Of a stretch of 64,000 nt of DNA, positions 4,491 to 52,082 are shown piece by piece. Source of the DNA: Selaginella moellendorffii (taxonomy: Eukaryota; Plantae; Lycopodiophyta). How positions within the stretch are numbered: the first letter of the stretch is position 1; every line of letters starts with the position of its first letter. The DNA lies in NCBI RefSeq assembly GCF_000143415.4, contig NW_003314293.1, forward strand, positions 651,763 to 715,762, given 5' to 3'. Below the pieces are notes generated by a model. The model was not told the DNA's origin, did no database searches, and worked only from the letters and a program-made list of their open reading frames with translations. The translations under genes and the position numbers were made by a program.

Positions 4491-4633
4491 AGCCAAGAGC
4501 TTCCAAGAGCTTCCAAAACTTGCGAGTGACGAACAAGGAAAAGGCCAAGAAGTAATGAACCTGGGCGGGATCATGGCAGTCGATTATTGCAAATTTTCGG
4601 CCACTTATCCGCGAGACTTGCCCGAAATGGAGA

Positions 4634-6385: not shown

Positions 6386-6587
6386 AGAAAATCAAGCTTA
6401 ATCGTCGCTAGATCTGGCCGAGAAGCGCGAGATCCTCGTGTGGATTCGCTAGTCCCAATCACCAGTATAGTAGCTCTAGACTAAAGGCACTGCGTTCTTG
6501 GTGTTTTGTCTTCTTCGTCGTTGTCAACTAAAGGATGTGATCGTCGTTCTATTGCTGTGCTAGGTCTTTTATTTCGTTGTGGGAGAC

Positions 6588-31779: not shown

Positions 31780-33720
31780 ACTACCCCAAGATGGATGCTG
31801 CGACATTGAAGTGGGAAGCTAGCACATGAGAGAATTGCGAGGAGCAAATCCTTTACCTTGCAAATCTTGTTGTATGGCAAGTGCAGGAGCATGGACGAGG
31901 CAAAGGCAGTGTTCCCCAATGATTTATGTTGGTCGTAGCATATGCCCAAAACAAGCATCTTTGTGAGGCCCGGTTTCCCATAGGAAGAATGCCGCGGCCA
32001 AGCGTGGTCGCGTTTACGACAACCATAGCCACTTTTCCAGCAAATCCGGTTTGACCATGCAAGAGTCATGCTGGATCAAATGCCGCAGCTCGACGTCGTG
32101 ACCTGGACCATGATGATCGTTGTGAATGCGGATTTGGCAGCGGCAAGAGATGTCTTCAATCGAATGCCGCAGCGGAATGTGGGTCGTGGACAGCGACTGT
32201 GTCGGCTCTCGCGCAAGCCGGATCTTATCGAGACCACATATGTTTTCAAGTGGGACACATGTCGAACTTCATATTAGTCCGCTTAAACAAGGCGACCTTG
32301 TTCTCAGCTGGAAACGGAGAGGATGGCTCTGAATTAGTCCCCTGACATAGGTTCCTTAAAACCTTCATGTGACCTTGTTTATAGCAACGCGATTTTTACA
32401 GATGTGCCCGCCCGAGATCATCAGACAGCCCGGTCTAAGCTTTGTTCCGGGCCATGAAAACGTAAGATCACGTCACCACCAAGCGTCAGCGTCCTGGTTA
32501 AACAGCATTTCAAAGAAACAAACGAACTTGTAGTTACAAGGCGAGCAAACTATCCTTGTTATTCCCACTCAACTTAGGGAAGGCTGCAGGATGGCTACAG
32601 CAACTATGACTACGAGATCGAAAGCCGCGAGGTGGAATGTGGCGCGGGAAGCTATGGGAGTGTGAGGCTTGGCGTGTACAGGGAACAGGCAGTGGCAGTG
32701 ACGAGCAACANNNNNNNNNNNNNNNNNNNNNNNNNNNNNNNNNNNNNNNNNNNNNNNNNNNNNNNNNNNNNNNNNNNNNNNNNNNNNNNNNNNNNNNNNN
32801 NNNNNNNNNNAAAGAGAGATCGAAGTGATGCGCTCACTGAAAAGTGAGTTCCGCGTTCCTCGGCCGCGTCCAAAGGGGCTGGAAAAGATATTTGATCGTA
32901 TGCACGTAATTTCTGGACAATGATGACCGAAGCTTATTTCCAGCAAAGCCGGTTTGATCAAGGAAGAGTTTTGCTAGATCAGATACCGCAGCTCGACCGC
33001 GTCGTGGCCTGGACTGCGATGATCGTCGCAAATGCACAAGAGATCTCTTCGATGGAATGCCGCAGCGTGATGTGGTGTCCTGGACTACAATGGAGGAAGC
33101 TATTCGACTCGATGCCACGGGAATCCCACATCTCTGTAAATGTCTCCCACCAAAGAATATTACATAGGCTTTGAAAGAGCAAGACTTAACTTTTGATTTC
33201 ACACTCCAGTTCTTGGCTTCTGTGAACTCGGAGGATGGCTCTGAACTGTCAAGTAAAACCTCCATGATCTTGTCGACAGCAGCACAATTGTTACTAATGT
33301 GGCCGAGTGCAATCTTATACACTTTGTCCGGGATCACCAGGCGTTATAGCGTCCTGGTTAAACACAGGAAAGCCAGCGGGATAAAGTATCTTGGACTATG
33401 GAGCATGGTCATCATTCCCATGGGCAACGAATGACTACGCGATCGCAAGCCGCGAGGTGGATCCAATGTGGTGCGGGAAGCTATGGCAGTGTGAGGCTAG
33501 GCGTGTACAGGTTTCAGAGAGCAGCATCCGAAGAGAAATCGAAGTGATGCGGTCACTCAAAGGTGAGTTGCTGAGCTCGTAGGGCGTGGTGATTGCCAGG
33601 GATTTGTGTGGCAGTCTTTTTAGTCTGCATGGCAGAGGCATCGCTCACGAGGATGTCAAGAGTGACGCTCTGAACTTCGGGATGAGGGCCAAGATGTGTG
33701 ACTTTGGCACCGCCAGGCTC
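31780..33720 (+). pseudogene. Mosaic of decayed fragments: two units of PPR piece (+), FtsH2 C-terminal piece (-) and kinase N-lobe piece (+)
   Basis: PPR pieces match the 35208 gene (MPQLDVVTWT). Kinase pieces match the 43781 gene (ECGAGSYGSVRLGVY; IAHEDVKSD..CDFGTAR). FtsH-like YKIALGHISNN..DKIMEVLL on the minus strand. Stops and frameshifts throughout. Confidence 0.8.
32711..32810. other. Assembly gap (100 N)
   Basis: Run of n. Confidence 1.
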
Positions 33721-33999
33721 TCAATCAGGGACACCATTACATCCAGCCAAGTGATGAGATGCACTTGGTGTGGCACGAGGATTGGAGCCATGCTCATAAG
33801 GTCATTCTTCAAGGTTGCATTGCAGGAAAGGAAACTAAACAACAAACTTTCCATCGTCATCGGATTTATGTTTCTACTTATTGGATCGAATAACTAACAG
33901 TGTTACTTACATTCTCAGTTTTTATTTCAGACAACCATCGCTTAAATATATTTCAAAAAATTACACCATCAGTGTTTACATCAGCTGGCTTTAGGAGGC

Positions 34000-35207: not shown

Positions 35208-36985
35208 ATGGGGTACGAGGATGGATGCTGCAACATTGAATACTATGCACAGATCGTCCGGGCGTGTGGCAATGCTGGAATCTTGTTGGAAGCTCGAAGA
35301 GTCCATGAGAGAATTGCGAGGAGTGCTCACTCACAAAGCCGCTACCTTGCAAATCTGGTCGTGGCTATGTATGGCAAATGTGGGAGTGTGGACGAGGCAA
35401 AGGGTGTTTTTGATCGCATTAGCCTCCCTAATGATTTCTCCTGGAATATGTTGGTCGTAGCGTATGCCCAAAACGGGCATTTGCGTGAGGCAAGATTGCT
35501 GATAGAAAGAATGCCGCGGCCAAGCGTGATCGCATTGACGGCCACCATAGCCGCTTGTGCGGAAGCTAAAAGAGTTCAAGAAGCTTTGGCTTTGTTTGAA
35601 TCAATGCCGGAGTGGAATGTGGTGGCCTGGAACACGATCATTCAGGCACTTGCCATGAACGGGGATCTACGAGGGGCTCGAGAGATGTTCGATCGCATGC
35701 CATTCAAGGACGTCATTTCCTGGACTACGATGACTGAAGCTTACTTCCAGCACTGCCGTTTCGACCAAGCAAGAGTTTTGCTGGGTCAAATACCGCAGCT
35801 CGACGTAGTCACCTGGACTGCGATGATCGTCGCAAATGCCGAGAGTGGGGATTTGTTATCCGCAAGAGATCTCTTCAATCGAATGCCGCAGCGGAATGTG
35901 GTGTCATGGACTGCGATGATGTCGGCGCTCGCCCAAGCCGGAGAGCTCATCGAGGCCAGGAAGCTCTTCGACTCGATGCCACAGCGGAACTCCATCTCTT
36001 TCAATGTGATGATCGTGGGCTACTCGCAGCAGGAAGATCTGAAAGAGGCGAAGGGGCTGTTTGACGCGGCGCCAGAGTGGGATCTCGTCGCCTGGACGGC
36101 GCTCCTCCAAGCCCAAGCGGCAAGAGGCAAGCTCCAGGACGCCATAGAACTCTTCGATGAGATGCCGCAGAGAGATGCCGTAGTGTGCACCGCCATGATC
36201 GCAGCCTACGCCAGCCATGGCCGCCTCGACGAAGCTCGAAGTATCTTCGACACCATGCACGAGAAAGATGCCATCGCGTGGACAGCGCTCACAGCAGCAT
36301 ATGCCCAGGCAGGGCATCTTGAGCACTCAAAGACCATGTTTGATTCCATGCCCTTACAGGACACTGTGGTGTGTACGGTGATGGTGGCGGCGTACGGCGA
36401 CAGTGGCGACGTGCTCGCCGCCAGGAGCGTGTTTGAGAAAATGCCCGTCAAGTGTACAGCTGCCTGGAACGCGGTCGTACAGGCCTATGCCCAGCGGGGG
36501 CATATGCTGGACTTTCGGAAGCTCTTGGCCAGGATGCCCGAGCACGACACCGTGTCTTGGAACACGGCCATCCAGGCGAATGCCCAGAACGGGCACAGCT
36601 GCGCGGCTTTGGAATCCTTTCGGGCGATGCTGCTGGAGGGATTCCGGCGGATGAGCTGAACTTCAGTGCGGTTCTCGCGGCTTGCAGTCACATTGGCCAT
36701 GTTGAAAGCGCGCGGGATCTTTTTGTGTCCATGGCACTAGATCACGATGTTGCGGCGATGTTGGATCACTACGACTCGGTGGTGGACGTGCTGGGGCGCG
36801 CTGGGCGAGTGGAGGAGGCCAGGGAGCTCGTCGCCACCATGCCATTTCTTCCGGATGCTGTGGCGTGGACGACGCTGCTGGGTTCTTGCAAGAAGAACCG
36901 GATCAAAGCCGCGGAGGTGGCTGGAAACGCGCACAAGCTCAATCCAACAAGCTCGGCACCTTTTGTCTTGTGGATTGGTAGCTAG
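35208..36985 (+). pseudogene. PLS-class PPR gene with a 1-nt frameshift near 36640 before the L2-S2-E region
   Basis: The 483-aa PPR ORF ends LLEGFRRMS*. Another frame continues GIPADELNFSAVLAACSHIG..HYDSVVDVLGRAG..MPFLPD..W. Confidence 0.82.
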
Positions 36986-36991
36986 TCGCGA

Positions 36992-37098
36992 AGTTTTTCG
37001 AGGAAGAAGGAATGCGGAGTTTGTTCTTAAGAGGTGGCAAAGTGTTTTCGAGGAAGAAGGTTCTTAAAAGGTGGCAAAGTGTTTTCGAGGTAGAAGAA
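36992..37098. repeat. Tandem repeat (~37 nt: GTTTTCGAGGAAGAAGG-TTCTTAA.AGGTGGCAAAGT)
   Basis: Three partial copies seen directly. Confidence 0.75.
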
Positions 37099-37235
37099 AT
37101 GTGGAGTTTGAGAGAGGTTGGGTCACCAAAGTCCTGTAAAGAAGAAGAAAGCAAAGTTTTCAAGGAAGAAAGATGGATGGCTGGCTGTTTCGATAGATCT
37201 CCCGCTTCCATCTCACGAGCAATCCATGAGGGCGG

Positions 37236-39419
37236 ATGTTGAGGAATGCACTGCGCAAGCAGTTCGTCCTCCTCGGTAAGAAGCCTCCTCTCGATCTTTT
37301 CTCCACGATCTTGGCTTCTCGATCTCCGGCACTCCGGTCTCAGCACAGCGAACCCACCCTCCTTCCGGATCTCCAGTCGAGCAGCGAACAGGAAGCGCTG
37401 GACCTCGTCCGCCAGTGCTGCGAGCTGGGATCTCTCGACCAGGCAAAGCGTCTCCACGCCTCCATCCTCGAGAAGGGCGTCTCCAGCGCCAAGCTCTTCT
37501 CCAAGTACCTCATCCGGATGTACGCGCAGTGTGGCAGCCTTGAGGACGCGCAGCGCGCATTCGATGGCATCGCTCACCCGGGCGTGGTCTCCTGGACCGA
37601 GCTCGTCAAGGCGTATGCCCACACCGGGCATCTTGGCGAAGCATTTCGCTGCTTTCGCTGGATGCTCCTCGCGGGCACCCGGCCGGATCTAGTCCTCCTC
37701 TCGCAGCTCCTCCTCCACCAGGAGCCTCCGCTCGGCCTGGAAGAAGCCAAGCTCCTCGACGCGATCGTCTGCTCGTCCGGGTACGCCAGAGATTTGCTCC
37801 TGGGAACTTCGCTCCTGGTCTGGTATGGGCGATGCGGGCGGCTCGAGGAGAGCAAGGCCGTCTTCTCCAGGATGGAGGGCCGCGACGCCGCTGCCTGGAA
37901 CGCGATGATCTGGAGCGCCATTCTCAGCGGCGAGAAGAAGGAGGCATTGACACTCTTCCAGGCGATGAAGGACGAGGGCGTTGCTCCGGAGGGTGTGGAC
38001 TACTGGGCGGCGCTCAAGGCCTGCGAGCTTGTCTCGGAGGTGAGAGCTCTCCACGCCGAGATCTCCTCGAGGAAGATGGAGGGCGATCCCGATGTGGCCT
38101 CGGCGCTCATCGACTGCTACGGACAGCTTGGTGAGCTCGAGGTGGCGGAGCAGCTCCTCTTCACTTTCGGTCTCGAGGAGGCCCCGTGCTGGACGAGCTT
38201 ACTCGTCGCGTACGCTCGCCACGGATACCACAGCCGGGTGATCCAAGTCTTCCACGAGATGCAGCACAGGCGCTTGACGGCCAACTTCGCCACCTTCGCC
38301 GCGGTGCTCGACGCCTGCGCCGGGCTGGGAGCTCTCGTCGAGGGGAGAGTCATCCACCGGCGAGTCGTCGAGGTCGAGAAGCTCCCCATCGCTGGAACTC
38401 TGGCGAGGTCCCTCGTCAGCATGTATGCCAAGTGTGGAGAGCTCGGGGAGGCGTGGAGCGTCTTTGAGGGTGTCACCGGCAAGCGGGAGCTCAGGCTCTG
38501 GAACACTTGCATCGACGCGTTCGCGGCTCACGGGCAGGGGCACTCGGTGCTCCAGCTCTTCCAGCTGATGCAGCAAGAGGGAGTGAAGCCGGATCAAACC
38601 ACCTTCTCGAGGCTGCTATTCGTCTGCTGCTACGTTGGTCTCATCGAAGCTGGCTATGCTTTCTTCGCCTTGATGATCACTGACCACTTGCTATCTCCTA
38701 GCCTGGAGAACTACGCCTGCATGGTCGATCTTCTGGGACGAGCTGGAAACCTAGATGGAGCTCAAAAACTTATCACCAGAACTCCATATCAATCCAGCCC
38801 CGTTCTCTGGAGGAGCTTGCTAGCGGCTTGTGGGATCCAAGGTGATGTCGAGCGAGGAAAACGAGCCGCTGTTCAGATCTTTACTTTGGATCCAACCATC
38901 GCGGAGGTATACGTGGTGCTGGCGAGAATCTACGAGAGCACTGCGAAACCGGCCATCGCTCGAAAGGTAAAGCTGCTGATGAAGGAGCGAGATGTAAGCT
39001 CGGAGCTAGCCCGGAGCTGGATCCAGATCAGTGGTGTCATTCACAGCTTCACCACTGGAGATCAAACTCATCCCCAAACCGAGGAGATATACGCTGCTCT
39101 CCAGAAGCTCGAGGCTGATTATCCGGCCTGGGAGGCTGCCGGGACGAGCAACAACGACTTGACCATGCACGACGTCGATGAGGAGGATGAAAACTCGGTT
39201 CACAGCGAGAAGCTGGCTCTTGTCGTTGGCCTGATGAACTCGCGGTTCCAGGAGAATGAGACGCCGGTGGTGGTGTTTAAGAACAAGAGGATGTGCCGTG
39301 AGTGCCACTCTTTCTTTGCGACGATATCGAAGGTGGCCGCTCGTGACATTGTCGTGCGGGACAGCTCCAGATTTCATTGGTTTAGACAGTGTTCTTGTTC
39401 CTGTGGGGATTACTGGTGA
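37236..39419 (+). CDS. PLS-E-DYW PPR protein (organellar C-to-U editing factor), intronless
   Basis: Transit-peptide-like N-terminus, PLS repeats, HSEKLA (HxE), KNKRMCRECH (CxxC), VRDSSRFH and terminal CSCGDYW. Confidence 0.95.
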   Translation: MLRNALRKQFVLLGKKPPLDLFSTILASRSPALRSQHSEPTLLPDLQSSSEQEALDLVRQCCELGSLDQAKRLHASILEKGVSSAKLFSKYLIRMYAQCGSLEDAQRAFDGIAHPGVVSWTELVKAYAHTGHLGEAFRCFRWMLLAGTRPDLVLLSQLLLHQEPPLGLEEAKLLDAIVCSSGYARDLLLGTSLLVWYGRCGRLEESKAVFSRMEGRDAAAWNAMIWSAILSGEKKEALTLFQAMKDEGVAPEGVDYWAALKACELVSEVRALHAEISSRKMEGDPDVASALIDCYGQLGELEVAEQLLFTFGLEEAPCWTSLLVAYARHGYHSRVIQVFHEMQHRRLTANFATFAAVLDACAGLGALVEGRVIHRRVVEVEKLPIAGTLARSLVSMYAKCGELGEAWSVFEGVTGKRELRLWNTCIDAFAAHGQGHSVLQLFQLMQQEGVKPDQTTFSRLLFVCCYVGLIEAGYAFFALMITDHLLSPSLENYACMVDLLGRAGNLDGAQKLITRTPYQSSPVLWRSLLAACGIQGDVERGKRAAVQIFTLDPTIAEVYVVLARIYESTAKPAIARKVKLLMKERDVSSELARSWIQISGVIHSFTTGDQTHPQTEEIYAALQKLEADYPAWEAAGTSNNDLTMHDVDEEDENSVHSEKLALVVGLMNSRFQENETPVVVFKNKRMCRECHSFFATISKVAARDIVVRDSSRFHWFRQCSCSCGDYW

Positions 39420-39519
39420 TAATAACTTTTTTCCTCATGAAAACTACAAACACCTAGCACTGAAACATCAAAGCTCATCACATAGTTTGCAAATTCTAAC
39501 CTTCCATATGGTAGAGATG

Positions 39520-40878
39520 TTAAATTAGCCTGTCGTAGACTTCCTGGGCAAATGGCCTGTTGCTAGCATCGTTGTCCATGCATTCTCGGATACAGGCAGC
39601 GACATCGTCAGTGTAAGAGCTGAGAAGGCTGAGTATGCTTTCCCGATGAGACACTGCCGGATCACTGCCAAAGACTTCGGTGTTGGACAAGAGAAAGGAC
39701 TTCCCGAGCTTGAGCTCCGCCATCACCACCCCCATCGAGTAGATGTCACACTCAAAGCTGTAGCGGCCACCAGCAATGCGCTCCGGGGCCTGGTAAATCC
39801 TCTTGCGGAGCTCGTAGTGTGGATCATTCCCCGACCTCTCCCTCTCGCTCATTTCCAGGGGATCTGCGAGGCGCGCTAGGAGGAACCCCGCGAGCTTGAC
39901 TTGCAAGCTTGCGGCTTGCTGCTGGGCGACGATGAGAATGTTGTTGGAGCTGATGCTCTCGTGCACAATGTGGCACCTGTGAAGATCGGCTACTGCTGCT
40001 GCCAGGCTCAGAAGCACACTGTTGGTGGCACCGGGATCTAGTCCTCCCAGTTGCTGAAAACTGTTAGCAATCTGGAATTCCAGGGTGGTGACTGCGGACT
40101 TGGAGTGGCATCCTTCCACCCGGCTCATAATATGATAGCTTCCATCCTGTTCGATCATCTTCTCCATCTTCACCAGGCCTAGCTCACTTGCTGGTATGTC
40201 CTGGTAGACGAGGATCAGCCTTCCAATTCGATTCAGCCTGCAAGCTTTGACCTTGGGCGTCGTGCCAACGGGAATGGTTTCAACGAAAAACACAGACCCA
40301 TCATCTGCCTCAAGGAGCCGGTCTTGGTCCTGCGGATTATAACTGGGAAGGCCCGCCATGCTTCGGGAGTAGACATTGCTGCTGATGAGATCTTGTTTTC
40401 TGATGGGCTTGAGATTCCTGGGATCCATGATCTTCGAGATAACTTTCCTGGAGTTACTCATGCCATCTCTATCTTTGTCCTCATTGTTACCAATATCAAC
40501 AATGCCGCCCTGTGCTTGCTTGGACAAGCTGACCAATATGTGTACAATGTTGACCAATTTCTCGATCTTGTCTAGCTGCTCGCGGACCCTCTTTGCTACA
40601 AACATGGATTCGTCGAGCACCTTTTGGAGCTTACACAGCCGATTGTAAATGCGCTGGTTGCAGAGCAACAAACCTTGTTTTTGCTCGTCAGAGATCCCCT
40701 TTTGGGTTTCAGCCACTGACCGGAGCTCCTTGTAGATCTCCACAGCAAGCACCATCCGAGCGTAGTCTTCCTGGTCGAGTCTCTCCAACAAACCCTTCAC
40801 ACGATTCAAGAGGTTAATGATGCTATCGATGGAGGCGACTAGGCCAACAACACCCGCCACAACACTGAAAGGATCCAT
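39520..40878 (-). CDS. HeLo/HELL-like helical N-domain plus pseudokinase (MLKL-like architecture), 452 aa, intronless
   Basis: N-terminus MDPFSVVAGVVGLV.. followed by about 120 aa of amphipathic helices. Kinase C-lobe with HESISSNNIL (no catalytic Asp), QVKLAGFL (GFL for DFG), YQAPE, DIYSMGVVMAEL and RP. Confidence 0.8.
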   Translation of the reverse strand: MDPFSVVAGVVGLVASIDSIINLLNRVKGLLERLDQEDYARMVLAVEIYKELRSVAETQKGISDEQKQGLLLCNQRIYNRLCKLQKVLDESMFVAKRVREQLDKIEKLVNIVHILVSLSKQAQGGIVDIGNNEDKDRDGMSNSRKVISKIMDPRNLKPIRKQDLISSNVYSRSMAGLPSYNPQDQDRLLEADDGSVFFVETIPVGTTPKVKACRLNRIGRLILVYQDIPASELGLVKMEKMIEQDGSYHIMSRVEGCHSKSAVTTLEFQIANSFQQLGGLDPGATNSVLLSLAAAVADLHRCHIVHESISSNNILIVAQQQAASLQVKLAGFLLARLADPLEMSERERSGNDPHYELRKRIYQAPERIAGGRYSFECDIYSMGVVMAELKLGKSFLLSNTEVFGSDPAVSHRESILSLLSSYTDDVAACIRECMDNDASNRPFAQEVYDRLI

Positions 40879-40907
40879 GAAGGCACTGTTCAGCTCACAC
40901 TTTATCC

Positions 40908-43781
40908 CTAGTGTTTTTCCTTCTCCAGTGACTCCTTCCAACTTCTGGCCATCTCAACATCTCGTTCAAGATCTTTGTCCCCAAGGAACTTCCTCCACTT
41001 TTCGACCCCTTGGGTGTCACCCAGGGCGTAGCAGTAGCGGAAGCAGACCGCAGCAGATTGGCGGTGGCGTTTCTTCTCGGCAGCCATGGCAAAAAAGTTG
41101 TAGGCTTGCATGGACACTTGCTTCAGTCCGGTTCTGGAGGCCACTAGCATTCCCATGTTAAAGAGGCTTTCAGCGTCAAGCTTGTCAGCAGACTTGGAAA
41201 CAAGCTCGATCAGCTCCTCCCCGTCTTTGTCTTGGTAACCAGCACCCGCTTGGTAGCACACTTGTGGATGCAAGCTCCAGAGTGATCGCCGAAACCAGTA
41301 CTCGGCCTCGCTTGTGTACTGACCTTTCTTCTGCACGAGTAAGAACGCAAGCATCGACGCTGCTCTTTCTGCACCATGGAGCAAAGCCTGTTTCAGTAGC
41401 TTCTCGGCCCCAGCCAAATCTCCTCGATAACGCAGCATGCCCGCCAGCTCCACCATGGCTAGCGAATTGCCGAGATCCACGGCTCGTTGCAGCAGCTGGA
41501 GCTTGCGTTCCCTGCCCACGCCCCCGCAAATGGCAAGCTGCAGCATTGCGGTGTCGTTGCCAGCTGAAACTCCCTGCTCCCACAGGCGGACTGCCATGTC
41601 ATTGTCTCCATTCTGGGAGAACTCCATCGCTTGCATGCTCAGGGCCTCGGCATCGCCCGCTTCGGCGGCAGCTCGCCACCATTCCATTGCCTTGCGTTCA
41701 TCTTGGAGCCTCCTTCGATAGAGAGCACCGATTTTTGTGACGACACTTGGCTCCATGTACTGCCTTTTCTCTGCGAGTATCTGGTGCCACTCGTCTGAAT
41801 GGAATTTGGCCGACATATTGAAGAGAGCGTTCATAGCCTTGATGCTGACATCTCTTGATTGCCTGAATATCCTCATTACCACTTCTTCTTCTCCCAGCTC
41901 GAGCAGACCATCCATAAGATCATACTCTACTGTCGACTTGTGACGATTCATTCGAAAAAACAGCAGTAGCTCGTCATCGGAAGTCGAGTTGAACCTCTTG
42001 CTCAATAAAGTTCTGAGCCTTATGCAAATAGAGTTCAGCGCGAGACGTCCTTTCCCTTCCCGGTGAATCCTTGTATTGAGGATTAAAGCTTTCATGCAGC
42101 TCAACCTGGCCCAGCCGGAAGTCATCCTCTCTAAATTAGCGGCTGCAGTGTAGAAGTCAATTGCATCCGTGTTCTCACATCTCAGCTTGTACAAGTCGCC
42201 AATGAACTCAAGCAGTGCGCCGTTTCTCGACTCAGCCAAGAGCCCTGCCTTGTCAATCGTGCCTTTGACAACACTCCTGAGGATTCTCCCCAAGAGGCTC
42301 CCACCCTCGACGCTCCTCTCCAGAAACTCCATCTCTTTGGCAGGAAGCTCGCGGTAACCCGGGTTGACGGCCATGTAGAAGAGTGCTAGAAGTGCCTGTG
42401 CGTGTGCATATCCCGTCTTGGCTGCTTTCAAGAGAAGATCGAGTACGTTCCTGTGGTTGCCATTGACCGTGGGAGCAAACTCAAGACAAGAGCTAAACAT
42501 TCCGCTCCGCAAACTATATACGTTGGCAAACTCCACTTGAGCATACGCGTTACCCCGGCTAGAAAGCTCTGCTAGATGCTGTATTGCATCACCAATTCCC
42601 ATCCTGGTTTGTATCATTGCCAAGTAGTAGTCCACAAGGGCGCTCATCAACATGTTGACACCGATCTCGTCTTCGAGCATCACAAGGCAGTCCTTGAACA
42701 GTTCCAATGCTGCCTCCCAGTTTCTTTGGCATCCGTAGCCATGGAAGTTCATGATACCCAGAAAGAGCTTGGCCACTGCGCTTTCAGACGTGGTAAACAC
42801 GTCAAATGCCTCCTCGTTTCGTTGTTGATAGAAAAGCATCCTGCCCTGGCGGATGAGGTCGGCGTTGTCGCCTTCTTCGTTCTCAAGGAAAGTGTCGGTC
42901 CAATAACACGCCAAGTTGACCCTCTCCGCCTCCCCAATGGCATGATCAAGCAGACCTTTAAAGCTATCGAAATCACGATCATCGCTGGAGTAAAGATGGT
43001 CAAGAGCATCAAGGACCTCATCGCAGCTGGGCCTTTCGAGTGGGCAGGAAGCCAAACACTGGATTACGATTTCAACGTCGCCGAGGAGCTCTTGCAGCAC
43101 AAGGCCAAGGCTGTAGATGTCAGAGGCCAAGCGATGGTACATACTGCCAGGAGGAGCAGCCCGTTTCTCGGGTGCCATGAAAGCCGGTGTGCCGAGTACC
43201 TCCCCAAAGTCATTGTCGCCCATCTGTCTTGCGGTGCCAAAGTCACACAGCTTGGCCCTCAGCCCAAAGTCAAGCAACACATTGTCACTCTTGACATCCT
43301 CGTGAGCAATGCCTCTACCGTGCAGGCTGCAAAGGCCGCCACACAAATCCCTGGCAATCACCACCTTGAGACGGCCCGACAAGCTTTGGCCGCTCGCATC
43401 CAGCAACGCCCTGAGCGATAAGTTGTAAGCGAGCTCCATGACAATGCAGCGATCATCATCCAGCCCCGTTTGGACGCGGCCGAGAAACTGGACGACGCGG
43501 GACTCACCTTTGAGTGACCGCATCACTTCGACCTCTCTTCGGATGCTGCTCTCTGAAACACCTCGGTTGTAGCTCTTGACTGCCACTGCTTGTCCCCTGT
43601 ATACGCCTAGCCTCACACTGCCATAGCTTCCCGCGCCACATTCCACCTCGCGGCTATCGATCTCGTAGTCATTGATATCTTCGTTGCTGTAGCCTTCCCG
43701 CAGCAGTACTATTGGGGATGGAGATGCTGAGCAGTCCATAGCTCTTAGTTGATTGCGTTGTAGGCTAGTTATATTCCCCAT
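40908..43781 (-). CDS. Non-RD TKL-type protein kinase fused to SEL1-like repeats, 957 aa, intronless
   Basis: GAGSYGSV, VAVK, RREVEVM, HEDVKSDNVLL, DFG and GTPAFMAPE. SEL1-like repeats include LLKAAKTGYAHAQALLA, AMEWWRAAAEAGDAEAL and LQRAVDLGNSLAMVELA. Confidence 0.9.
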   Translation of the reverse strand: MGNITSLQRNQLRAMDCSASPSPIVLLREGYSNEDINDYEIDSREVECGAGSYGSVRLGVYRGQAVAVKSYNRGVSESSIRREVEVMRSLKGESRVVQFLGRVQTGLDDDRCIVMELAYNLSLRALLDASGQSLSGRLKVVIARDLCGGLCSLHGRGIAHEDVKSDNVLLDFGLRAKLCDFGTARQMGDNDFGEVLGTPAFMAPEKRAAPPGSMYHRLASDIYSLGLVLQELLGDVEIVIQCLASCPLERPSCDEVLDALDHLYSSDDRDFDSFKGLLDHAIGEAERVNLACYWTDTFLENEEGDNADLIRQGRMLFYQQRNEEAFDVFTTSESAVAKLFLGIMNFHGYGCQRNWEAALELFKDCLVMLEDEIGVNMLMSALVDYYLAMIQTRMGIGDAIQHLAELSSRGNAYAQVEFANVYSLRSGMFSSCLEFAPTVNGNHRNVLDLLLKAAKTGYAHAQALLALFYMAVNPGYRELPAKEMEFLERSVEGGSLLGRILRSVVKGTIDKAGLLAESRNGALLEFIGDLYKLRCENTDAIDFYTAAANLERMTSGWARLSCMKALILNTRIHREGKGRLALNSICIRLRTLLSKRFNSTSDDELLLFFRMNRHKSTVEYDLMDGLLELGEEEVVMRIFRQSRDVSIKAMNALFNMSAKFHSDEWHQILAEKRQYMEPSVVTKIGALYRRRLQDERKAMEWWRAAAEAGDAEALSMQAMEFSQNGDNDMAVRLWEQGVSAGNDTAMLQLAICGGVGRERKLQLLQRAVDLGNSLAMVELAGMLRYRGDLAGAEKLLKQALLHGAERAASMLAFLLVQKKGQYTSEAEYWFRRSLWSLHPQVCYQAGAGYQDKDGEELIELVSKSADKLDAESLFNMGMLVASRTGLKQVSMQAYNFFAMAAEKKRHRQSAAVCFRYCYALGDTQGVEKWRKFLGDKDLERDVEMARSWKESLEKEKH

Positions 43782-44069
43782 ACCATCGTGAGAGATGGTT
43801 CGTTGCGGCTGGAATCTCTGCGAATTCGGAGAGCATGACTCCCTGTTGACTTGGCTCGCTTAGCTCGCTTAGCCATGTCCTTTGTCATGAGCCCTTGTTA
43901 CAACTATAGCAGTGAGCAATTTCATGCTTGCATCAGCCTTGGATTCAAAACATGGAGTTCTGAATAACATAAAAAATTTAAATCTTGCTCCTTGAAGCTT
44001 ATCAAGGCCGATGCCAAAGCAAATTTTATAACTATAAATGTCTTTGAATCCCACCTCTCTGCACATGTC

Positions 44070-45730
44070 TGGTCACGACGTCGAGCTGCGTTTTTTATCC
44101 ATCTCGATCAAACCGAAACTGTGGAAGTCGTCGTCAAGGAACAAACATCTCTCGAGCCACTCGTAAAGCTCCGTTCATGGCAAGTCTTTGAATGATCGTG
44201 GTTCCAGGCCACCACATTCCACTCGGGCATTGATCAGCAACCATTGATATGGAATATCAATAACGTAGTTATTGATAACTTCGTTGCTATAGCCTTCTTG
44301 CAGCAATGGGGATGGAGATGATGCAGAATCTATAGCCGTACCTAACAACAAGGACGCGTTGTACCCATTCCAGCGGGAAAGATGGTTTGTGATTGTACCT
44401 TTGGAATCAAAGGATGAGGCAATCTGTGGGCCAAGAAAATTTAATTTCCAACTTTTCTTTTTGTCATTATTTGATCCGAGTCATGCAACATGCAATCTGT
44501 TGCCAAGCAGGCAATATCATCCATTCATTCATATACTATTTACCTTGTAACGGCCTCCAAGAAGCATGAGACCAATGGAATTAAATATGCCGTGTTGAAA
44601 ATTGCTGTAGCTGTTTGTCGTCGGCATCTATGATACACAGTAAACTGCGAGTCCAAGGAAAGACTGGAGTTGAGGAGAGAATCACGGCAATGTCACTAGC
44701 ATGCGCAATCTGAATGTTGCCAGGCAAAAGTCCACAGGTGGAGGGGTAAAGCAGACATACTACTCCAAATGTTGGCCCTGGCTTTAGCAGAATTTGCAAT
44801 TTACAAATACAGGACAATTAACAATTGTCATCCTCGAATTTAGCCGTCTCCGTTTGGAGATTCTAGCACGGTGAAGGAGATGGGGTGGAGCAGTTGAAAA
44901 CATGGACAGAGATAATCTTGAAACACTGCACACCGAACTGATAGACCAACTAGAGTTATGGACATGGCAAGCAATGGTGTTCTTTTGTATTGCATCAGCC
45001 TGGGCCAGGGGTTTGGTGGTGGCGTGATCTTACGTAATGATGGCCTAGAACTCCATGCTCGAGAAGGTTAGAGTGGGGTGTCGATCTTGGATGGTCACAA
45101 TCCTGAAACTTTTAATTGAGAAAGAAACCATAAGAGGGGATGAATTTAGAGCCATCCTCTCTGAGTTCACAAAGATTCCAACCGAGAACAAGGTCACCTT
45201 GCGTAAACGGACTCGGTTGCAAGCGTATACAATATTCTCTAGTGGGAGACATGTATAGTATAGACCACTGGAAGACATATGTAGTTAGAGATTCGTGATG
45301 GCAAGCTTCAGGGCCTTGATAAGATCTCTGGCTTGGGCTGAGCACCGACACCATTGCAGTCCACGACACCACAGCCCGCTGCGGCATATGATTGAAGAGA
45401 TCTCTTGTCGATTCCAAATCTCCGCTCTCGGCATTTGCAACAATCATTGCGGTCCAGGTGACAACGGCAAGCTGCGGCATTTTACCCAGCAAAGCAAGGC
45501 CCTTGCTTGATCAAACCGGCTTTGAGCTTCAATCATCGTCACCCAGGAAATCACGTCCTTGACTGGCATACGCTCAAACATGTCTCGAGTTCCTCGTAAA
45601 TCTCCGTTCATGGCAAGTGCCTGACTGATCGTGTTCCAGGCCACCACATTCCACTTCCGGCACAATGCTAAATCTTCTTGGGACTCTTTAAGCCTTTGCA
45701 CAAGCGGCTATGGTGGCCTTAAACGCGATC
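44070..45730 (-). pseudogene. Mosaic of decayed PPR (-), kinase N-terminal (-) and FtsH2 C-terminal (+) fragments
   Basis: PPR pieces at 44070-44235 and 45300-45720. Kinase piece SASSPSPLLQEGYSNEVINNYVID at about 44250-44337. FtsH piece MMA*NSMLEK..LIEKETIRGDEFRAILSEFTKIPTENKV at 45010-45195. Confidence 0.8.
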
Positions 45731-45973: not shown

Positions 45974-48407
45974 TCATTTCGCGAGCTTCCCTTCGGCTCT
46001 AGCAGCCTCCTTGACGATGACGTTGATTCCTCGCACCCAGAAATCTGCATTGCTCTCACCCGATGCCTGAAAGTGCACCTCTCTCCCGGTGCTGGTGATC
46101 ACCCTGAAGGTTCCAGGCCCATCGTCGGACGACCTCCTGTTCTTCTGAAACCTGCTTGAAGCTCCCAGTCCGGCTTCCTTACACGCCACCGTACGCCTGC
46201 TTGTGTTACCCCACGTAAGCAAGCCCGTCCTCAGCATTCGAACCGACTTCAAGTGAGGAGTTCCCTTGCCTTGGCGAGTGTGCTTCGATAGCTGGCCTCC
46301 CAACAGGACAAGCTTCATCGCAAGGTGATCGAGGAGGACCTCTTCAGCCGCTTTCGTTGAGCTAGCCCTCTGGGCCAGAGTCAGAGCTGTCTCTCCCCTG
46401 CCGTTTGCGAGATTGCAATCGGCCCCCGCGTTTAGAAGCACTCTGCAAGCTTCTGCGTGCCCTTCCTTCGCGGCTAGCATCAGCGGGCTGTAGCCTTCCT
46501 CGTCCAGCAAGTTCACGGCGTATCCATGCTTGAGAAGCTTGCTCACACCTTCCAAGTTTCCCCGCCATGATGCGAAGTGGAGCGGCTTGAAGTTCTCCAC
46601 CTTGAGCAGGTCGCAGAGGATAGAATCCAGGAGGATTTTTTCCAGTTGCTCCAGCCAGCCACTGTACGTTGCAAGACATATGGCTGTCTCTCCTTTCCTG
46701 TTCTTCAAGTTCATGTCGGCTCCAGCATGCACGAGCAGCCGGAAAACTTCGACGTGACCGGATTGAGCAGCTATCATCAGAGCAGTGTAGCCGTATTGGT
46801 CTTGAGCGTTCACTTCCAAATACGGCTCCTTGAGAAGCCTCGACATGACTTTCACGTCTCCTCTCTTCGCGGCAAAATGAAGCTGCGAAAACACGTGAAG
46901 GTTGCTTGACTGGATACTGCATCCCGATTCGAGGGCCTTCCATATCACGTCGTTGAAAGATGCACCGTTGCCATTTGCTTTTGCTACTGTAAGAGCACTG
47001 TTGCCGCCTGTGTTTATAAACCCCGCATCTGCCCCGGCCAACAGCAGCTCCTTGCAGCACTGCTCGAGTCCCAGTCTCGCTGCTAGCATAAGACCTGTCT
47101 CCTCATTAGCTCCCACTACGTTCAAATCACATCCGTGTGAGATGAGCGTCTGTAGTATCGGAAGCGACCCATACTTGAGCGCCAAAAGTAGCGGAGGAAA
47201 CTCTTCGTCGGCTTTTGTGTGTATACCGTCCTCGACGTTGGCCCCGGACTTGAATAGCAATTCCACTGCTGGTGCATTGCGGCAAAGAATTGCATGGCAG
47301 AGAATTGTCCTCCCAAAATGATCGTCGTTTGGAGAGAAGTAGTTCAGAAGAAGCTCCAGTACTGCACCTGTTTCTTCCCAGTACTCAACAGCACACCATA
47401 GCTCGTTGTATGGGCTTGCTAGGCCTGCACCGACTCGCACTTCCTCCAGAGATCCAGGCTCCCATGACCATGCTCCGAGCGATGCCTTACACCCAGTTTT
47501 TGCTCCTGCCTGTAAAGAAGCGATAGGACGCATTAGTTCTTAGAAATTAAAACGACGAACTTTGTTCTAACAAGTGATAGTTATGGCATACCTCCAGAAG
47601 ATATTTGACAACGTGAACTTGCCTCCCAACGATGGCGGATATTAGAGGTGTACACCTTACGTTCGCATGAAGAGCTGGCTTTGCCGATCGCAGCAGCATT
47701 CTATACCACGAGTTGATGTCTACTCCACTCTACACTTTCGCCCATCAGTTTTTCAAAAAAACAACTCTTTGTTGACAGCATACCTGGATGAGAGCTTCAA
47801 CGACGTCCAGAAAACCCCGGTTACTTGCGTAAGCAAGAGCTTGCACGAGCACTTCGGGCCTTATCATCTCCGACGAAATAAGAATGTGCACGGACTTCAC
47901 TTGCTGATACAGGCAAGCTTCGAGCAGGGCGTCCTCCAAGGCGAGTTGGCCGGCACCAGACCTTTGCAAACAATTCACGATCTCGTGATGGCCCTCTCTT
48001 GCTGCTGCCGTGGACGCATAGCCTCTGAAAAGCTTTTCATTCGGGTCAGCTCCCGCAAGCTGCGAATAGAAGAATGTTTAATGTCAGCGAGAGAGAAAAA
48101 AAAAACTCCGGCATCGATATCTTACCAGTAGCATCTTCGCAATGTAGATGTGACCTGCGTGCGCAGCTGCAAACAAAGCAGTGACATCGGTTTTAAAAAT
48201 CTCGTGGTCGATCTTTACTTCGTCGGGAGCCTCCTCGTGCTGGATAGAATCCGTGTGCTTGACACGCAGACTCACGGGCCCCTTGTAGTTGACATCCACG
48301 ATCTGATCCGACAGCGCCTCGGAGACTCCGAGAACATCGCCCGCCAGAGCGCATTCTATCAGCCGCTGTGACACCGCATGCTCGCCCGCCATAGTCTTCG
48401 CATACAT
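45974..48407 (-). CDS. Ankyrin-repeat protein with C-terminal PH-like domain (At5g14230-like)
   Basis: VSQRLIE..DVTALFAAAHAG, many ankyrin repeats (GYTALMIAAQSGH, GYSPLMLAAKEGH) and C-terminal KHTRQGKG..LTWG..WVRGI. Confidence 0.9.
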
Positions 48408-49910: not shown

Positions 49911-52082
49911 ATGAGTACGCAACAAAGCAGGATAAGATCCAACGCAGCGGCTTTACTTACCAGGATACGAGCTTGCAGAAACTTGGAAAGAGCAAGAAAA
50001 GTTCACGCCGAGGCTGTAGAAACCGGTGACCATCTCGAAGCGTTCGTCGCAAACTCTCTTGTCAGGATGTTCGCAAAGTGTGGCAGCATGGCCGACGCTC
50101 GTCACGTCTTCGACAAGCTTCCACTGCCCGATGTAGCGTCGCAAAACGCACTGATTCAAGGCTACGCGGAGAACGGACAGGGTGAAGTTGCCTTGGAGCT
50201 CTTCGAAAGCTTGCGGCAGCGTAGCTACAGGCCGAGTTCCCGTAGCTTTGTCGCTGTTCTCAAGGCTTGCATCGATCTAGCAGCGAAAGAGGAGGCCAAA
50301 CTGGTCGATGGAAGGCCCGTGAAGTCGGACAGTCTCGGAAAAGGAGTGGAGATCCATGTTCTCGCAGGAAAACTCGGTTGTCTCGGCAGCATCTTCGTGC
50401 TAAACAGCCTGATCAGCTTCTACGCGAAGTGTGGCAGCATGGTGGACGCTCGCAGGGTGTTCGACGGCATGAAGCAGCGAGATATAGTCTCCTGGACGAG
50501 TTTGATGCTCGGCTACGTTGAAAGTGGAGAGCCAGAGATGGGGCTGGATCTGTTCGCAGCGTTGCTAGCCCAACGAGACTGTGATCCGGACGCTACAACC
50601 TTCGTGGCTGCTCTCAATGCTTGCACTGCTCTGGCGGCGAAAGAAGATGGCAGACTTGTCGATGGAAGAGTTCTGAGACTTAAGTCGCTGGAGCAGGGAA
50701 TGGCGATTCACTGCGAAGCTCGGAAGCTCGGCTATGATCTCCACAGCGTCTTCGTGGCGAACAGCTTGATCAACATGTACGCCAAGTGTGGAGGCTCGCT
50801 GGACGCTCGTAAAGTCTTTGACAGTATGACGCACCACGACGTTGTCTCCTGGAATTCTTTGATACTGGGCCTTGTCGAGAACTCTCAAGGTGGACTGGCT
50901 TTGGATCTGTTTCCCTGCTCGAGCTGCCCTGCTCAAACTCTCAGCTTCGTGATCGCCCTCAAGGCCTGTAGCTGCGTTGCTGCCAGTGAGGATGGAGAAC
51001 TTGTCGATGATAAGATGGTGAAAGTCGAAGCTCTGGCGAAGGGGATGGAGATCCACTCTCGAGCACGAAAGCTGGGCCACGAGTCGGAGATTCTCGTCGC
51101 AAACGCGCTGGTTGACATGTACGCGAAGTGCGGAAGCTTGGAGGACGCTCGCGGGATTTTCAACCGGATGCCGCTGCACAGCCTTGTTTCCTGGACGAGT
51201 TTGATGCTCGGGTACGCGGAGAATGGCGATGCTGACCAAGCGCTGGAACTCTTCGCCTTGGTGCGAGCTCGAGGCTGCGACGTGCGGGCATATCTCGCGG
51301 CGCTGAAAGCTTGCGGGACTGTGGTGTCGCTGGACCTCGCAAGAGCCATCCATGAAGACATCACTCGAGCCGGACTGGAGAATTCTCTGGCTCTGGACAC
51401 CGGCCTGGTCGACGTTTACGCCAAGTGTGGAAGCTTGGATTCTGCTCGTCGAGTTTTCGATGCTGTAGCCTCGAAAGACTCGGTGACTTGGACAGCGCTC
51501 GTAGCGGGCTATGGCAGACAAGGTGACACAAGCCGGGTCTTCGAGTTCTTTCACAGGATGCAAGACGAGGGACTTCGGCCAAACGCTGTGACTTTCCTGT
51601 GTCTTCTCACTGCCTGTAGCCATGGTGGGCTTGTCGAGACGGGGAAGAGCTACTTCCAGGCGATGGAGCCCAGATATGGTCTTGTTCCTGGTATCGAGCA
51701 CTACCACTGCATGCTGGACATGCTTGGTCGCGCCAACGAGCTCGAGAGTGCCGTGGAGATGGCGAGAAGGATGCCTTTCAAGCCAAACCCGGTGACTTGG
51801 ATCACCATCCTGGGAGCCTGTCACAAGTGGAAGAACGTCGCGGTGGGAAGGATTGCGTTTGACGCGCTGGTGGAGCTGGAAGTCGGCGAAGGAGCCGTGT
51901 ACACGCTCATGTCCAGCATCTATGGAGCTCGAGGGATGTGGGAAGAACAGGCTCGAGTGCTGGAGGCCATGAGAAGAGCTCGAAAGAAACCGAGACGGCG
52001 ATGGTGGTCGGACCAAATGGAAAGGATTATCGGTGGCGATTCTTGTCAAGCTCGCTGTTTGTCTGGAAAATCAAATTTTTAG
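49911..52082 (+). CDS. PLS-class PPR protein with E domain, intronless
   Basis: MYAKCGS..DAR.VFD repeats, LTACSHGGLV, EHYHCMLDMLGRA and MPFKPNPVTW. No DYW domain. Confidence 0.92.
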   Translation: MSTQQSRIRSNAAALLTRIRACRNLERARKVHAEAVETGDHLEAFVANSLVRMFAKCGSMADARHVFDKLPLPDVASQNALIQGYAENGQGEVALELFESLRQRSYRPSSRSFVAVLKACIDLAAKEEAKLVDGRPVKSDSLGKGVEIHVLAGKLGCLGSIFVLNSLISFYAKCGSMVDARRVFDGMKQRDIVSWTSLMLGYVESGEPEMGLDLFAALLAQRDCDPDATTFVAALNACTALAAKEDGRLVDGRVLRLKSLEQGMAIHCEARKLGYDLHSVFVANSLINMYAKCGGSLDARKVFDSMTHHDVVSWNSLILGLVENSQGGLALDLFPCSSCPAQTLSFVIALKACSCVAASEDGELVDDKMVKVEALAKGMEIHSRARKLGHESEILVANALVDMYAKCGSLEDARGIFNRMPLHSLVSWTSLMLGYAENGDADQALELFALVRARGCDVRAYLAALKACGTVVSLDLARAIHEDITRAGLENSLALDTGLVDVYAKCGSLDSARRVFDAVASKDSVTWTALVAGYGRQGDTSRVFEFFHRMQDEGLRPNAVTFLCLLTACSHGGLVETGKSYFQAMEPRYGLVPGIEHYHCMLDMLGRANELESAVEMARRMPFKPNPVTWITILGACHKWKNVAVGRIAFDALVELEVGEGAVYTLMSSIYGARGMWEEQARVLEAMRRARKKPRRRWWSDQMERIIGGDSCQARCLSGKSNF

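What the first reader, a model, noticed from the sequence alone, without database searches (positions are those of the whole stretch)
40908..43781. Kinase + SEL1-repeat architecture, non-RD, with an N-myristoylation motif
Seen: MGNITS fits the MGxxxS myristoylation consensus, the catalytic loop is HED (non-RD), and SEL1-like repeats occur in two blocks. Established: non-RD kinases are enriched among innate-immune kinases, and TKL-kinase/SEL1 fusions are heavily expanded in arbuscular mycorrhizal fungi and some protists but atypical of angiosperms. Inference: a membrane-anchored intracellular receptor kinase, possibly of non-plant origin.
Basis: partly seen in the sequence, partly recalled or inferred. 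Interest (0 to 1): 0.72.

Follow-up and report, generated by a model that had tools for sequence, protein, structure and literature searches.

The report
Spikemoss kinase with Sel1-like repeats
This is a real, expressed spikemoss (Selaginella moellendorffii) gene for a soluble signalling kinase fused to a long Sel1/TPR-like helical repeat arm; it belongs to a small undescribed family so far found only in seed-free plants, lies 29 bases upstream of an MLKL-like dead kinase, and its supposed lipid anchor is probably not a real conserved feature.

Summary
The 957-codon intronless ORF (40908-43781, minus strand) is real, intact and transcribed. The genome is Selaginella moellendorffii.

**Confirmed**
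- It is a complete TKL-like kinase with an HED (non-RD) catalytic loop.
- About 690 helical residues follow, best matched by Sel1-like repeats. Pfam's Sel1 cut-off is not met, and block 1 is weak.

**Not upheld: the myristoyl anchor**
- The second haplotype has a 1-base insertion that puts MGN out of frame, so the shared ORF starts at MDCS.
- Conserved uORFs end just after the MGN ATG.
- No homologue starts with MG.

**Origin unresolved**
- A full-length homologue (HED and the short C-lobe kept) exists in Adiantum ferns, and a partial one in a protein of unknown organism.
- These form one strongly supported clade that is not nested in fungal, oomycete, amoebozoan or bacterial kinases.
- Arabidopsis CTR1 scores like the best protist hits.

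**Context**
- An MLKL-like pseudokinase gene starts 29 nt downstream and is transcribed continuously with it.
- Between haplotypes the kinase half is nearly identical, while the repeat half is 3.3% diverged (omega 0.55-0.9).

**Best reading:** a cytosolic sensor or scaffold kinase, perhaps upstream of the pseudokinase. The scan already noted the other haplotype's copy (s1-422200).

The parts
40908..43781 (-). Complete intronless CDS of the kinase-SLR protein (957 aa from the MGN ATG; stop TAG at 40908-40910)
   Evidence: The RNA-seq shows no splice joints and minus-strand coverage over 39484-43899.
43737..43739 (-). Second in-frame ATG (MDCS, codon 15). It is the only start shared by both haplotypes and lines up with the start of the homologues.
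43782..43896 (-). 5' leader with upstream ATGs at 43888, 43876, 43836 and 43786. uORF1 (35-39 codons) and uORF2 (23 codons) end at 43769 and 43765, just inside the MGN-MDCS interval. Both uORFs are kept in haplotype B.
   Evidence: The transcript contig reaches 43896 and no reads lie beyond 43900. uORF listing.
42987..43664 (-). Protein kinase domain (aa 40-265), TKL-like, only about 226 aa long. The C-lobe lacks the alphaG segment between subdomains IX and XI.
   Evidence: The Pfam match stops at profile position 192 of 263. Alignments. PDB neighbours are LRRK2, CTR1, DLK and IRAK4.
43296..43304 (-). Catalytic-loop HED (aa 160-162): non-RD, invariant in the whole family
42192..42884 (-). Helical repeat block 1 (aa 300-530): degenerate Sel1-like repeats. 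This is the best-conserved non-kinase part of the family (33-34% identity to Adiantum, 29% to P0139).
41742..42191 (-). Middle helical region (aa 531-680). No family assignment, low model confidence, partly missing in Adiantum.
40911..41741 (-). Helical repeat block 2 (aa 681-957): Sel1/TPR-like pairs of 12-14-residue helices. It is the most polymorphic part between haplotypes (omega 0.90).
39520..40878 (-). Downstream partner gene (452 aa): N-terminal helical region plus a dead kinase (HES for HRD, AGF for DFG). Its ATG lies 29 nt after the kinase gene's stop codon, and it is transcribed continuously with the kinase gene.
32402..33897 (+). Degraded kinase-domain relics of the same family. HED is kept in one piece and VAVK has become VAVT in another. 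The pieces are interrupted by frame breaks and an assembly gap.

Best explanation
The gene encodes a soluble cytoplasmic Ser/Thr kinase of the TKL type. It is non-RD (HED), has a shortened C-lobe without alphaG, and is fused to a ~690-residue Sel1/TPR-like alpha-solenoid. It belongs to a small, undescribed family seen so far only in seed-free land plants: Selaginella, Adiantum, and one protein of unknown organism. Shown: the ORF is intact and transcribed in both haplotypes; the catalytic residues are complete; the architecture has been kept since the lycophyte-fern split. Inferred: the solenoid is the binding (sensor or scaffold) part. Inferred further: the kinase, being non-RD and so probably not gated by activation-loop phosphorylation, is switched by what the solenoid binds. 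The most plausible substrate is the MLKL-like pseudokinase encoded 29 nt downstream on the same continuous transcription unit, by analogy with RIPK3 phosphorylating MLKL. N-myristoylation is not a conserved property. At most it is a peculiarity of one allele, and translation most likely starts at MDCS.
For: - Existence and expression. Coverage is stranded over 39484-43899 with no joints, and both alleles are seen.
- Kinase competence: (IAHED..K..N.LLDFGLR.K.CDF is invariant).
- Repeat identity.
- Family: Adiantum capillus-veneris KAI5066517.1 at E 2e-82, aligned over aa 59-921; P0139; one clade with 100 SH-aLRT support.
- Long-term constraint: the repeat arm is alignable between lycophyte and fern. 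Between haplotypes aa 266-957 has omega 0.55, below neutral (p=0.018).
- Sensor-like polymorphism: the repeat half has dS 0.053 against 0.02 in the flanking genes (p=0.004). Omega of block 2 is 0.90, above the flanks' 0.28 (p=0.008). The kinase half has 0 synonymous changes.
- Partner: the 29-nt gap (38 nt in haplotype B), reads crossing it, and one 4.7-kb contig over both genes. The partner's solved-structure hits include MLKL (1.6e-7). Its language-model neighbours are Ascomycota HeLo/DUF7580 kinase-like clusters (0.96).
- Against the anchor.
Against: - No functional data exist. The kinase-pseudokinase link rests on adjacency only.
- Adiantum shows no called gene within 10 kb, so the pairing is not shown to be conserved.
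- Pfam does not call HeLo in the partner, and its structure model failed (pLDDT 39).
- No RHIM-like motif is present in either protein.
- Adiantum has DFE for DFG and a degenerate G-loop, so catalysis may not be what the family conserves.
- Omega near 1 in block 2 could equally mean relaxed constraint.
- The AF2 model of the whole protein is weak (mean pLDDT 57).
- The haplotype A MGN start cannot be excluded without translation data.
Confidence: 0.55

Rival explanations
1. One reading: an N-myristoylated, membrane-anchored intracellular receptor kinase recently acquired from a non-plant donor (Mucoromycota-type kinase-Sel1).
For: MGNITS fits the consensus, and its ATG has a good context (G at -3, G at +4). 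The best word-search hit is a Dissophora kinase-Sel1 protein. Its first kinase domain shares the short C-lobe.
Against: Haplotype B has MGN out of frame, and that allele is transcribed. uORFs overlap the MGN ATG. The homologues have no MG start. Fern homologues on a 157-Mb chromosome make a recent transfer untenable. The gene sits between PPR-DYW and ankyrin genes in both haplotypes. Its GC3 is ordinary.
Confidence: 0.08
2. Ancient horizontal acquisition: an early land plant took up a kinase-Sel1 gene from a Mucoromycota-like fungus or a protist, and seed plants later lost it.
For: Kinase+Sel1 with a ~225-aa short kinase domain is otherwise seen in Mortierellomycota (Dissophora, Actinomortierella). 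Sel1-like and kinase genes are highly expanded in Rhizophagus (PMC8647823). The gene is intronless in Selaginella and in A. nelumboides. A clade of the plant family plus Dissophora short kinase domains is not rejected (AU p=0.07). The partner also has fungal-looking neighbours.
Against: The plant clade is not nested in any donor group. Per-domain scores to protists and fungi (65-83 bits) are no better than to Arabidopsis CTR1 (71 bits). No ordinary plant kinases were in the tree. The repeat arm matches bacterial TPR proteins as well as fungal Sel1. The Mortierellomycota loci have no pseudokinase neighbour.
Confidence: 0.2
3. The kinase-SLR protein is a lineage-specific scaffold kinase with no link to immunity or cell death, and its adjacency to the pseudokinase is coincidental (a compact genome with overlapping transcription units).
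For: The pairing is not seen in the Adiantum annotation. The downstream gene has 2-4 times higher read depth, which suggests a promoter of its own. The S. moellendorffii genome is gene-dense here.
Against: A 29-38-nt spacing on the same strand is kept in both haplotypes. The partner resembles MLKL and HeLo-kinase proteins. Other notes of this scan report MLKL-like pseudokinases fused to SEL1 repeats elsewhere in this genome (untested).
Confidence: 0.25
4. The gene is drifting towards loss: relaxed constraint on the repeat arm and a damaged start region.
For: Omega is 0.90 in block 2, not different from neutral (p=0.40). There is a frameshift between the two ATGs in haplotype B. Kinase relics of the same family lie 7 kb away.
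Against: The ORF of 942-957 codons is intact in both haplotypes despite 69 substitutions and one in-frame indel in the repeat half. Overall omega is 0.55, below neutral (p=0.018). The gene is transcribed. The full length has been kept since the lycophyte-fern split.
Confidence: 0.1

Closest known systems
Mucoromycota kinase-Sel1 proteins (e.g. [quoted passage not shown]
   Same: A TKL-like kinase is directly followed by Sel1-type repeats. The first kinase domain of the Dissophora and Actinomortierella proteins is also ~225 aa and lacks the alphaG segment.
   Different: The fungal proteins have canonical Sel1 repeats (17 repeats, 530 bits), usually two or more kinase domains, and HRD catalytic loops (visible in the alignment). 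Here the repeats are degenerate (14 bits), there is one kinase domain, and the loop is HED. The kinase tree does not nest the plant family among them.
RIPK3-MLKL necroptosis pair of vertebrates
   Same: An active kinase lies next to a protein with an N-terminal helical region plus a dead kinase, whose solved-structure matches include MLKL.
   Different: There is no RHIM. The kinase is not a RIPK orthologue; its nearest solved kinases are LRRK2 and CTR1. It carries a repeat solenoid. No functional link is shown.
Plant MLKLs (Mahdi et al., bioRxiv 10.1101/681015) and fungal HeLo/HELL-kinase-like proteins (PMC12881547)
   Same: These give context for the partner gene: a helical bundle plus a pseudokinase. 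The plant MLKL family is reported as conserved across seed plants. Fungal HELL domains fused to kinase or pseudokinase domains are described.
   Different: The target itself is not an MLKL. The partner is nearer to Ascomycota clusters by language-model features and was not shown to belong to the seed-plant MLKL family.
Raf-like/CTR1 MAP3Ks and LRRK/ROCO TKL kinases
   Same: These are the best solved-structure sequence matches: LRRK2 75 bits and Arabidopsis CTR1 71 bits. GenBank and UniProt label the locus 'MAP3K' or 'MAP kinase'.
   Different: Identity is only about 30%. The catalytic loop is HED rather than HRD, the C-lobe is truncated, and the accessory domains differ.
Sel1-like repeat proteins (SEL1L, Legionella LpnE/LceB, Oxalobacter 6ok3)
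   Same: The C-terminal arm gives its best sequence and fold matches to these.
   Different: The Pfam Sel1 cut-off is not reached. The repeats are irregular, and the Sel1-like blocks are split by a middle region (aa 531-680) with no family assignment.

Membership tests
Eukaryotic protein kinase superfamily (active) | G-loop GxGxxG, VAIK Lys, alphaC Glu, catalytic Asp plus Asn, DFG, APE | tested here: met
   GAGSYG 49-54, K69, E83, HEDVKSDN 160-167, DFG 180-182, APE 203-205. Pkinase E 4e-32.
Eukaryotic protein kinase superfamily (active) | Full-length C-lobe (alphaF to alphaI, including alphaG) | tested here: not met
   The Pfam match ends at profile position 192 of 263. About 30-40 residues between subdomains IX and XI are absent here, in Adiantum and in P0139.
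Non-RD kinases | No Arg before the catalytic Asp | tested here: met
   HED, invariant in all six family sequences and kept in a relic copy.
TKL group | Nearest characterised kinases are TKL members | tested here: met
   LRRK2, CTR1, DLK, Raf and IRAK4 lead the PDB hits, but STE20 (TNIK) and Src-family kinases score close behind. This is similarity only; no kinome-wide tree was made.
Sel1-like repeat (Pfam PF08238) | Score above Pfam's gathering threshold | tested here: not met
   14.1 bits against a cut-off of 30.7.
Sel1-like repeat / TPR clan solenoid | Significant sequence or fold similarity to solved SLR proteins | tested here: met
   phmmer E 1e-5 to 5e-5. hhalign 95%, E 2e-8. Foldseek top hit 6ok3 at E 1e-9 with low TM-scores on a pLDDT-57 model. 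Atlas 10 of 10 Sel1. Block 1 is only E 0.011.
N-myristoylated proteins | MGxxx[ST] at the true N-terminus | tested here: inconclusive
   The motif is present in haplotype A. Whether this ATG is used is doubtful: four upstream ATGs, with uORFs ending just downstream of it.
N-myristoylated proteins | Motif conserved in alleles and homologues | tested here: not met
   It is out of frame in haplotype B and absent from Adiantum, P0139 and the paralogue model.
Receptor-like kinases (RLK/Pelle) | Signal peptide or TM segment; IRAK/Pelle-type kinase | tested here: not met
   The maximum 19-aa hydropathy is 1.5, inside the kinase core. IRAK4 is not the best match.
Mucoromycota kinase-Sel1 family | Kinase domain nested within that clade | tested here: inconclusive
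   Not nested. A forced clade with the Dissophora short kinase domains gives AU p=0.07.
RIPK3-MLKL-type module | Kinase phosphorylates an adjacent or partner 4HB-pseudokinase; RHIM in the kinase | not testable with these tools
   Adjacency and co-transcription are shown. No RHIM-like tetrad is present. Phosphorylation cannot be tested here.

The most novel reading that the evidence does not exclude
The kinase-SLR gene and the HeLo-like pseudokinase 29 nt downstream form a two-gene, possibly dicistronic, RIPK3/MLKL-like death or immune switch of seed-free plants. The Sel1-like arm would be a polymorphic sensor kept as two old alleles (raised dS and omega), while the kinase half is homogenised. 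The module is older than, and separate from, the seed-plant MLKL family.
Probability: 0.2. Interest if true: 0.8.

Novelty: new variant of a known kind. Interest (0 to 1): 0.5.

Why it matters
Kinase-Sel1 fusions are known as expanded, uncharacterised families in Mucoromycota. Plant MLKLs have been described across seed plants. This locus adds a kinase-SLR family in a lycophyte and in ferns with its own hallmarks: HED, no alphaG, and a degenerate repeat arm. In Selaginella it is physically coupled to an MLKL-like pseudokinase.

If the two act together, this would be a kinase-triggered executioner pair in an early-diverging vascular plant. That would make the evolution of necroptosis-like signalling outside animals directly testable.

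If they do not, the locus is still a clean example of three things: a lineage-restricted kinase architecture lost in seed plants; an N-terminal motif that fails once alleles and homologues are compared; and a fused database gene model (EFJ22078.1) that RNA data do not support.

Tried and rejected
- **Word search of the repeat arm alone:** it found only the protein itself.
- **Word search of the partner:** it found nothing, not even the partner itself.
- **AF2 model of the partner from two near-identical alleles:** it failed (pLDDT 39), so no fold search was run on it and the HeLo call stays a lead.
- **Pfam at E up to 10:** no HeLo in the partner.
- **Fused 1365-aa JGI model (EFJ22078.1) and the 243-aa and 318-aa models:** rejected, because no splice joints appear in RNA-seq.
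- **A programmed frameshift joining the two ORFs:** considered because the downstream frame is open for 21 codons upstream in haplotype A. Dropped because haplotype B closes it.
- **Contamination:** rejected, because synteny (ankyrin gene, kinase, pseudokinase, PPR-DYW) holds in both haplotype scaffolds.
- **Compositional anomaly:** none (GC3 0.615 against 0.59-0.79 in neighbouring genes).
- **Conserved pairing:** Adiantum DNA was not retrievable and no neighbour was called. The Mortierellomycota loci have no pseudokinase neighbour.
- **Literature:** searches for kinase+Sel1 in Selaginella and for MLKL in Selaginella gave nothing relevant.
- **Organism of P0139 (UniParc UPI000162633D):** the tools could not give it. 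From memory the ID range suggests a 2008 moss deposit, but this is untested.
Full report
**1. What is there**

The window holds an uninterrupted 957-codon ORF at 40908-43781 on the minus strand. Its neighbours are PPR and PPR-DYW genes, an ankyrin-repeat gene and other plant genes. The protein cluster names the organism as Selaginella moellendorffii. GenBank holds a fused 1365-aa model of this locus (EFJ22078.1, 'MAP3K') and a 318-aa model from the second haplotype scaffold. The second haplotype (GL377610.1, locus L001) has the same gene order: ankyrin gene, kinase, pseudokinase, PPR-DYW. Contamination is therefore excluded.

**2. Expression and gene structure**

Two stranded RNA-seq runs cover 39484-43899 on one strand only. 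There are no splice joints and no reads beyond 43900. A 4.7-kb contig of another run is colinear with the genome from 39300 to 43896. The gene is therefore intronless, and the fused database model, which needs an intron, is not supported.

Read depth is 2-7 over the kinase gene and 10-20 over the gene downstream. Variants of both haplotypes appear in the reads, so both alleles are transcribed.

**3. The kinase**

- Pfam Pkinase scores E 4e-32 but matches only profile positions 6-192 of 263.
- All catalytic residues are present: GAGSYG, K69, E83, HEDVKSDN, DFG, APE, D221, R250.
- The loop is HED, so the kinase is non-RD.
- About 30-40 residues between subdomains IX and XI (the alphaG segment) are missing.
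- The nearest solved kinases are LRRK2 (75 bits), Arabidopsis CTR1 (71), TNIK, DLK, Raf and IRAK4. The domain is therefore TKL-like.
- There is no hydrophobic segment that could span a membrane.

**4. The repeat arm**

Pfam gives only sub-threshold TPR_10 and Sel1 matches. Other evidence is stronger.

- The last ~280 residues match solved Sel1-repeat proteins at E 1e-5.
- A family profile aligns to the Sel1 array of a Dissophora protein with 95% probability.
- The AF2 model (mean pLDDT 57, but 70-80 over aa 660-950) is a run of paired 12-14-residue helices.
- Its best Foldseek hits are Sel1 proteins and SEL1L, followed by TPR superhelices.
- The ten nearest Atlas clusters all carry Sel1.
- Block 1 (aa 300-530) is weaker at E 0.011, but 9 of its 13 listed weak hits are Sel1-repeat proteins. 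The aligned motifs are typical, for example LGxMxxxGxGxxxNxxxAlxxF.
- Block 2 also aligns to bacterial Ala-rich TPR proteins.

'Two blocks of Sel1-like repeats' is a fair description of a degenerate SLR/TPR-clan solenoid.

**5. The myristoylation motif**

MGNITS fits the consensus, but four observations speak against it.

- (a) Haplotype B has one extra A between the MGN and MDCS ATGs. There the MGN ATG heads a 37-codon out-of-frame uORF, and the long ORF (942 codons) starts at MDCS. The insertion and two linked SNPs appear in a contig from an independent run, so this is a real allele.
- (b) The leader reaches at least 43896 and holds upstream ATGs at 43888, 43876, 43836 and 43786. Two uORFs, conserved in both haplotypes, end at 43769 and 43765, which is after the MGN ATG but before MDCS. 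Under the scanning model this favours re-initiation at MDCS (inference).
- (c) The Adiantum proteins and P0139 begin at the alignment column of the MDCS Met, and none has Gly2.
- (d) The paralogue model has a different N-terminus.

Translation itself was not measured.

**6. Relatives**

The word search gave only the protein's own cluster, a Dissophora globulifera kinase-Sel1 protein (E 2e-40) and many unrelated kinases.

The exhaustive search found a full-length homologue, Adiantum capillus-veneris KAI5066517.1. It scores E 2e-82 with 29% identity over aa 59-921. HED and the short C-lobe are kept, and DFG has become DFE. Two A. nelumboides proteins also appeared, as did P0139 (436 aa, organism not given). 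P0139 has the same HED short kinase and a homologous stretch to aa 385-536. The A. capillus-veneris gene lies on a 157-Mb chromosome, and the A. nelumboides gene is intronless.

After these hits, per-domain scores drop to 65-83 bits. Those come from Acanthamoeba, Polysphondylium, Mastigamoeba, Actinomortierella, Achlya, Dissophora and others. That is the same range as Arabidopsis CTR1.

In a tree of 88 kinase domains the plant sequences form one clade (SH-aLRT 100) on a long branch. The clade is outside the Mortierellomycota, oomycete, amoebozoan and bacterial groups. Forcing it together with the Dissophora short domains costs 20 log-likelihood units (AU p=0.07). No ordinary plant kinases could be included.

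The family is therefore old in land plants and absent, as far as this search shows, from seed plants. Its ultimate origin is open.

**7. Allele comparison**

| Region | Synonymous changes | Non-synonymous changes | dS | dN | omega |
|---|---|---|---|---|---|
| Kinase half (aa 15-265) | 0 | 2 | 0 | 0.0035 | not defined |
| aa 266-957 | 23 | 46 | 0.053 | 0.029 | 0.55 |
| Last block (aa 681-957) | 6.5 | 20.5 | 0.036 | 0.033 | 0.90 |
| Flanking pseudokinase gene | 7 | 7 | 0.0235 | 0.0067 | 0.28 |
| Flanking PPR-DYW gene | 10 | 9 | 0.0198 | 0.0054 | 0.27 |

- The repeat half is below neutrality (p=0.018) but above the flanks' omega (p=0.004).
- Its dS exceeds that of the flanks (p=0.004) and that of the kinase half (p=0.0006).

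This fits a polymorphic binding surface on old alleles next to a homogenised kinase. Relaxed constraint in the last block cannot be excluded.

**8. The neighbour**

Twenty-nine nt after the stop codon (38 nt in haplotype B) a 452-codon ORF starts. It has a helical N-terminal ~125 residues and a kinase fold with HES for HRD and AGF for DFG.

Its solved-structure hits are STK33 (8e-10) and several MLKL pseudokinases (from 1.6e-7). Its Atlas neighbours are Ascomycota HeLo/DUF7580 kinase-like clusters (0.96). Such fungal HELL-pseudokinase proteins are described in PMC12881547. Plant MLKLs are reported across seed plants (10.1101/681015).

Pfam does not call HeLo and the structure model failed, so the helical-bundle identity is only a lead. 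Neither protein has a RHIM-like tetrad.

**9. Reading**

The descriptive part is well supported: a soluble non-RD TKL-like kinase with an SLR arm, from a family restricted to seed-free plants. The mechanism is inference from architecture, adjacency, co-transcription and the polymorphism pattern. In that reading the arm senses or scaffolds, and the kinase acts on the adjacent MLKL-like protein.

Earlier notes of this scan describe the haplotype B copy in the same terms (s1-422200). They also report MLKL-like pseudokinases fused to SEL1 repeats elsewhere in this genome. I did not test those notes.

Noticed in passing
window 32402-33897 (+): Broken relics of the same kinase family: pieces with ECGAGSYG..VAVT and with IAHEDVKSD..CDFG, interrupted by frame breaks and a run of N (assembly gap near 32710-32810). 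The haplotype B gene model EFJ18219.1 (231 aa) is stitched from such pieces.
   Followed up: partly
window 44211-44336 (-): A short stretch 430 nt upstream of the gene translates to a 52%-identical copy of aa 14-49 of the kinase protein. It is probably a duplication remnant.
   Followed up: no
window 42967-43001: A ~33-nt stretch inside the kinase CDS is shared with another, much more highly expressed transcript (contig depth 430 against 46). Many reads match only this stretch and run on into unrelated sequence on both sides.
   Followed up: no
window 43765-43888 (-) and L001 5842-5970: Two upstream ORFs (35-42 and 23 codons) in the 5' leader are kept in both haplotypes. An in-frame 9-nt (AKR) repeat difference preserves the uORF1 frame, which may point to translational control.
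   Followed up: partly
window 42987-43739 versus 40911-42986: There is a sharp change in haplotype divergence within one gene: 2 differences in 753 nt of the kinase half against 69 in 2073 nt of the repeat half. This suggests a gene-conversion or recombination boundary near codon 266-300.
   Followed up: partly
window 39520-43781: GenBank models EFJ22078.1 (1365 aa, fusing both ORFs through an intron), EFJ22079.1 (243 aa) and EFJ18360.1 (318 aa) are not supported by RNA-seq, which shows no joints.
   Followed up: yes
window 45974-47533 (-): Ankyrin-repeat gene directly upstream on the same strand (743-aa model in haplotype B). Several distant kinase hits carry ankyrin repeats, but no link to the kinase-pseudokinase pair was examined.
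   Followed up: no
window 4605-6395 (-): A 596-codon ORF in a GC-rich stretch (61%) with no Pfam family at E 0.001.
   Followed up: no
window 35208-39419 and 49911-52082: Three intronless PPR genes (one DYW type, one E type) flank the locus. The PPR-DYW gene differs by 0.9% between haplotypes, with omega 0.27.
   Followed up: partly
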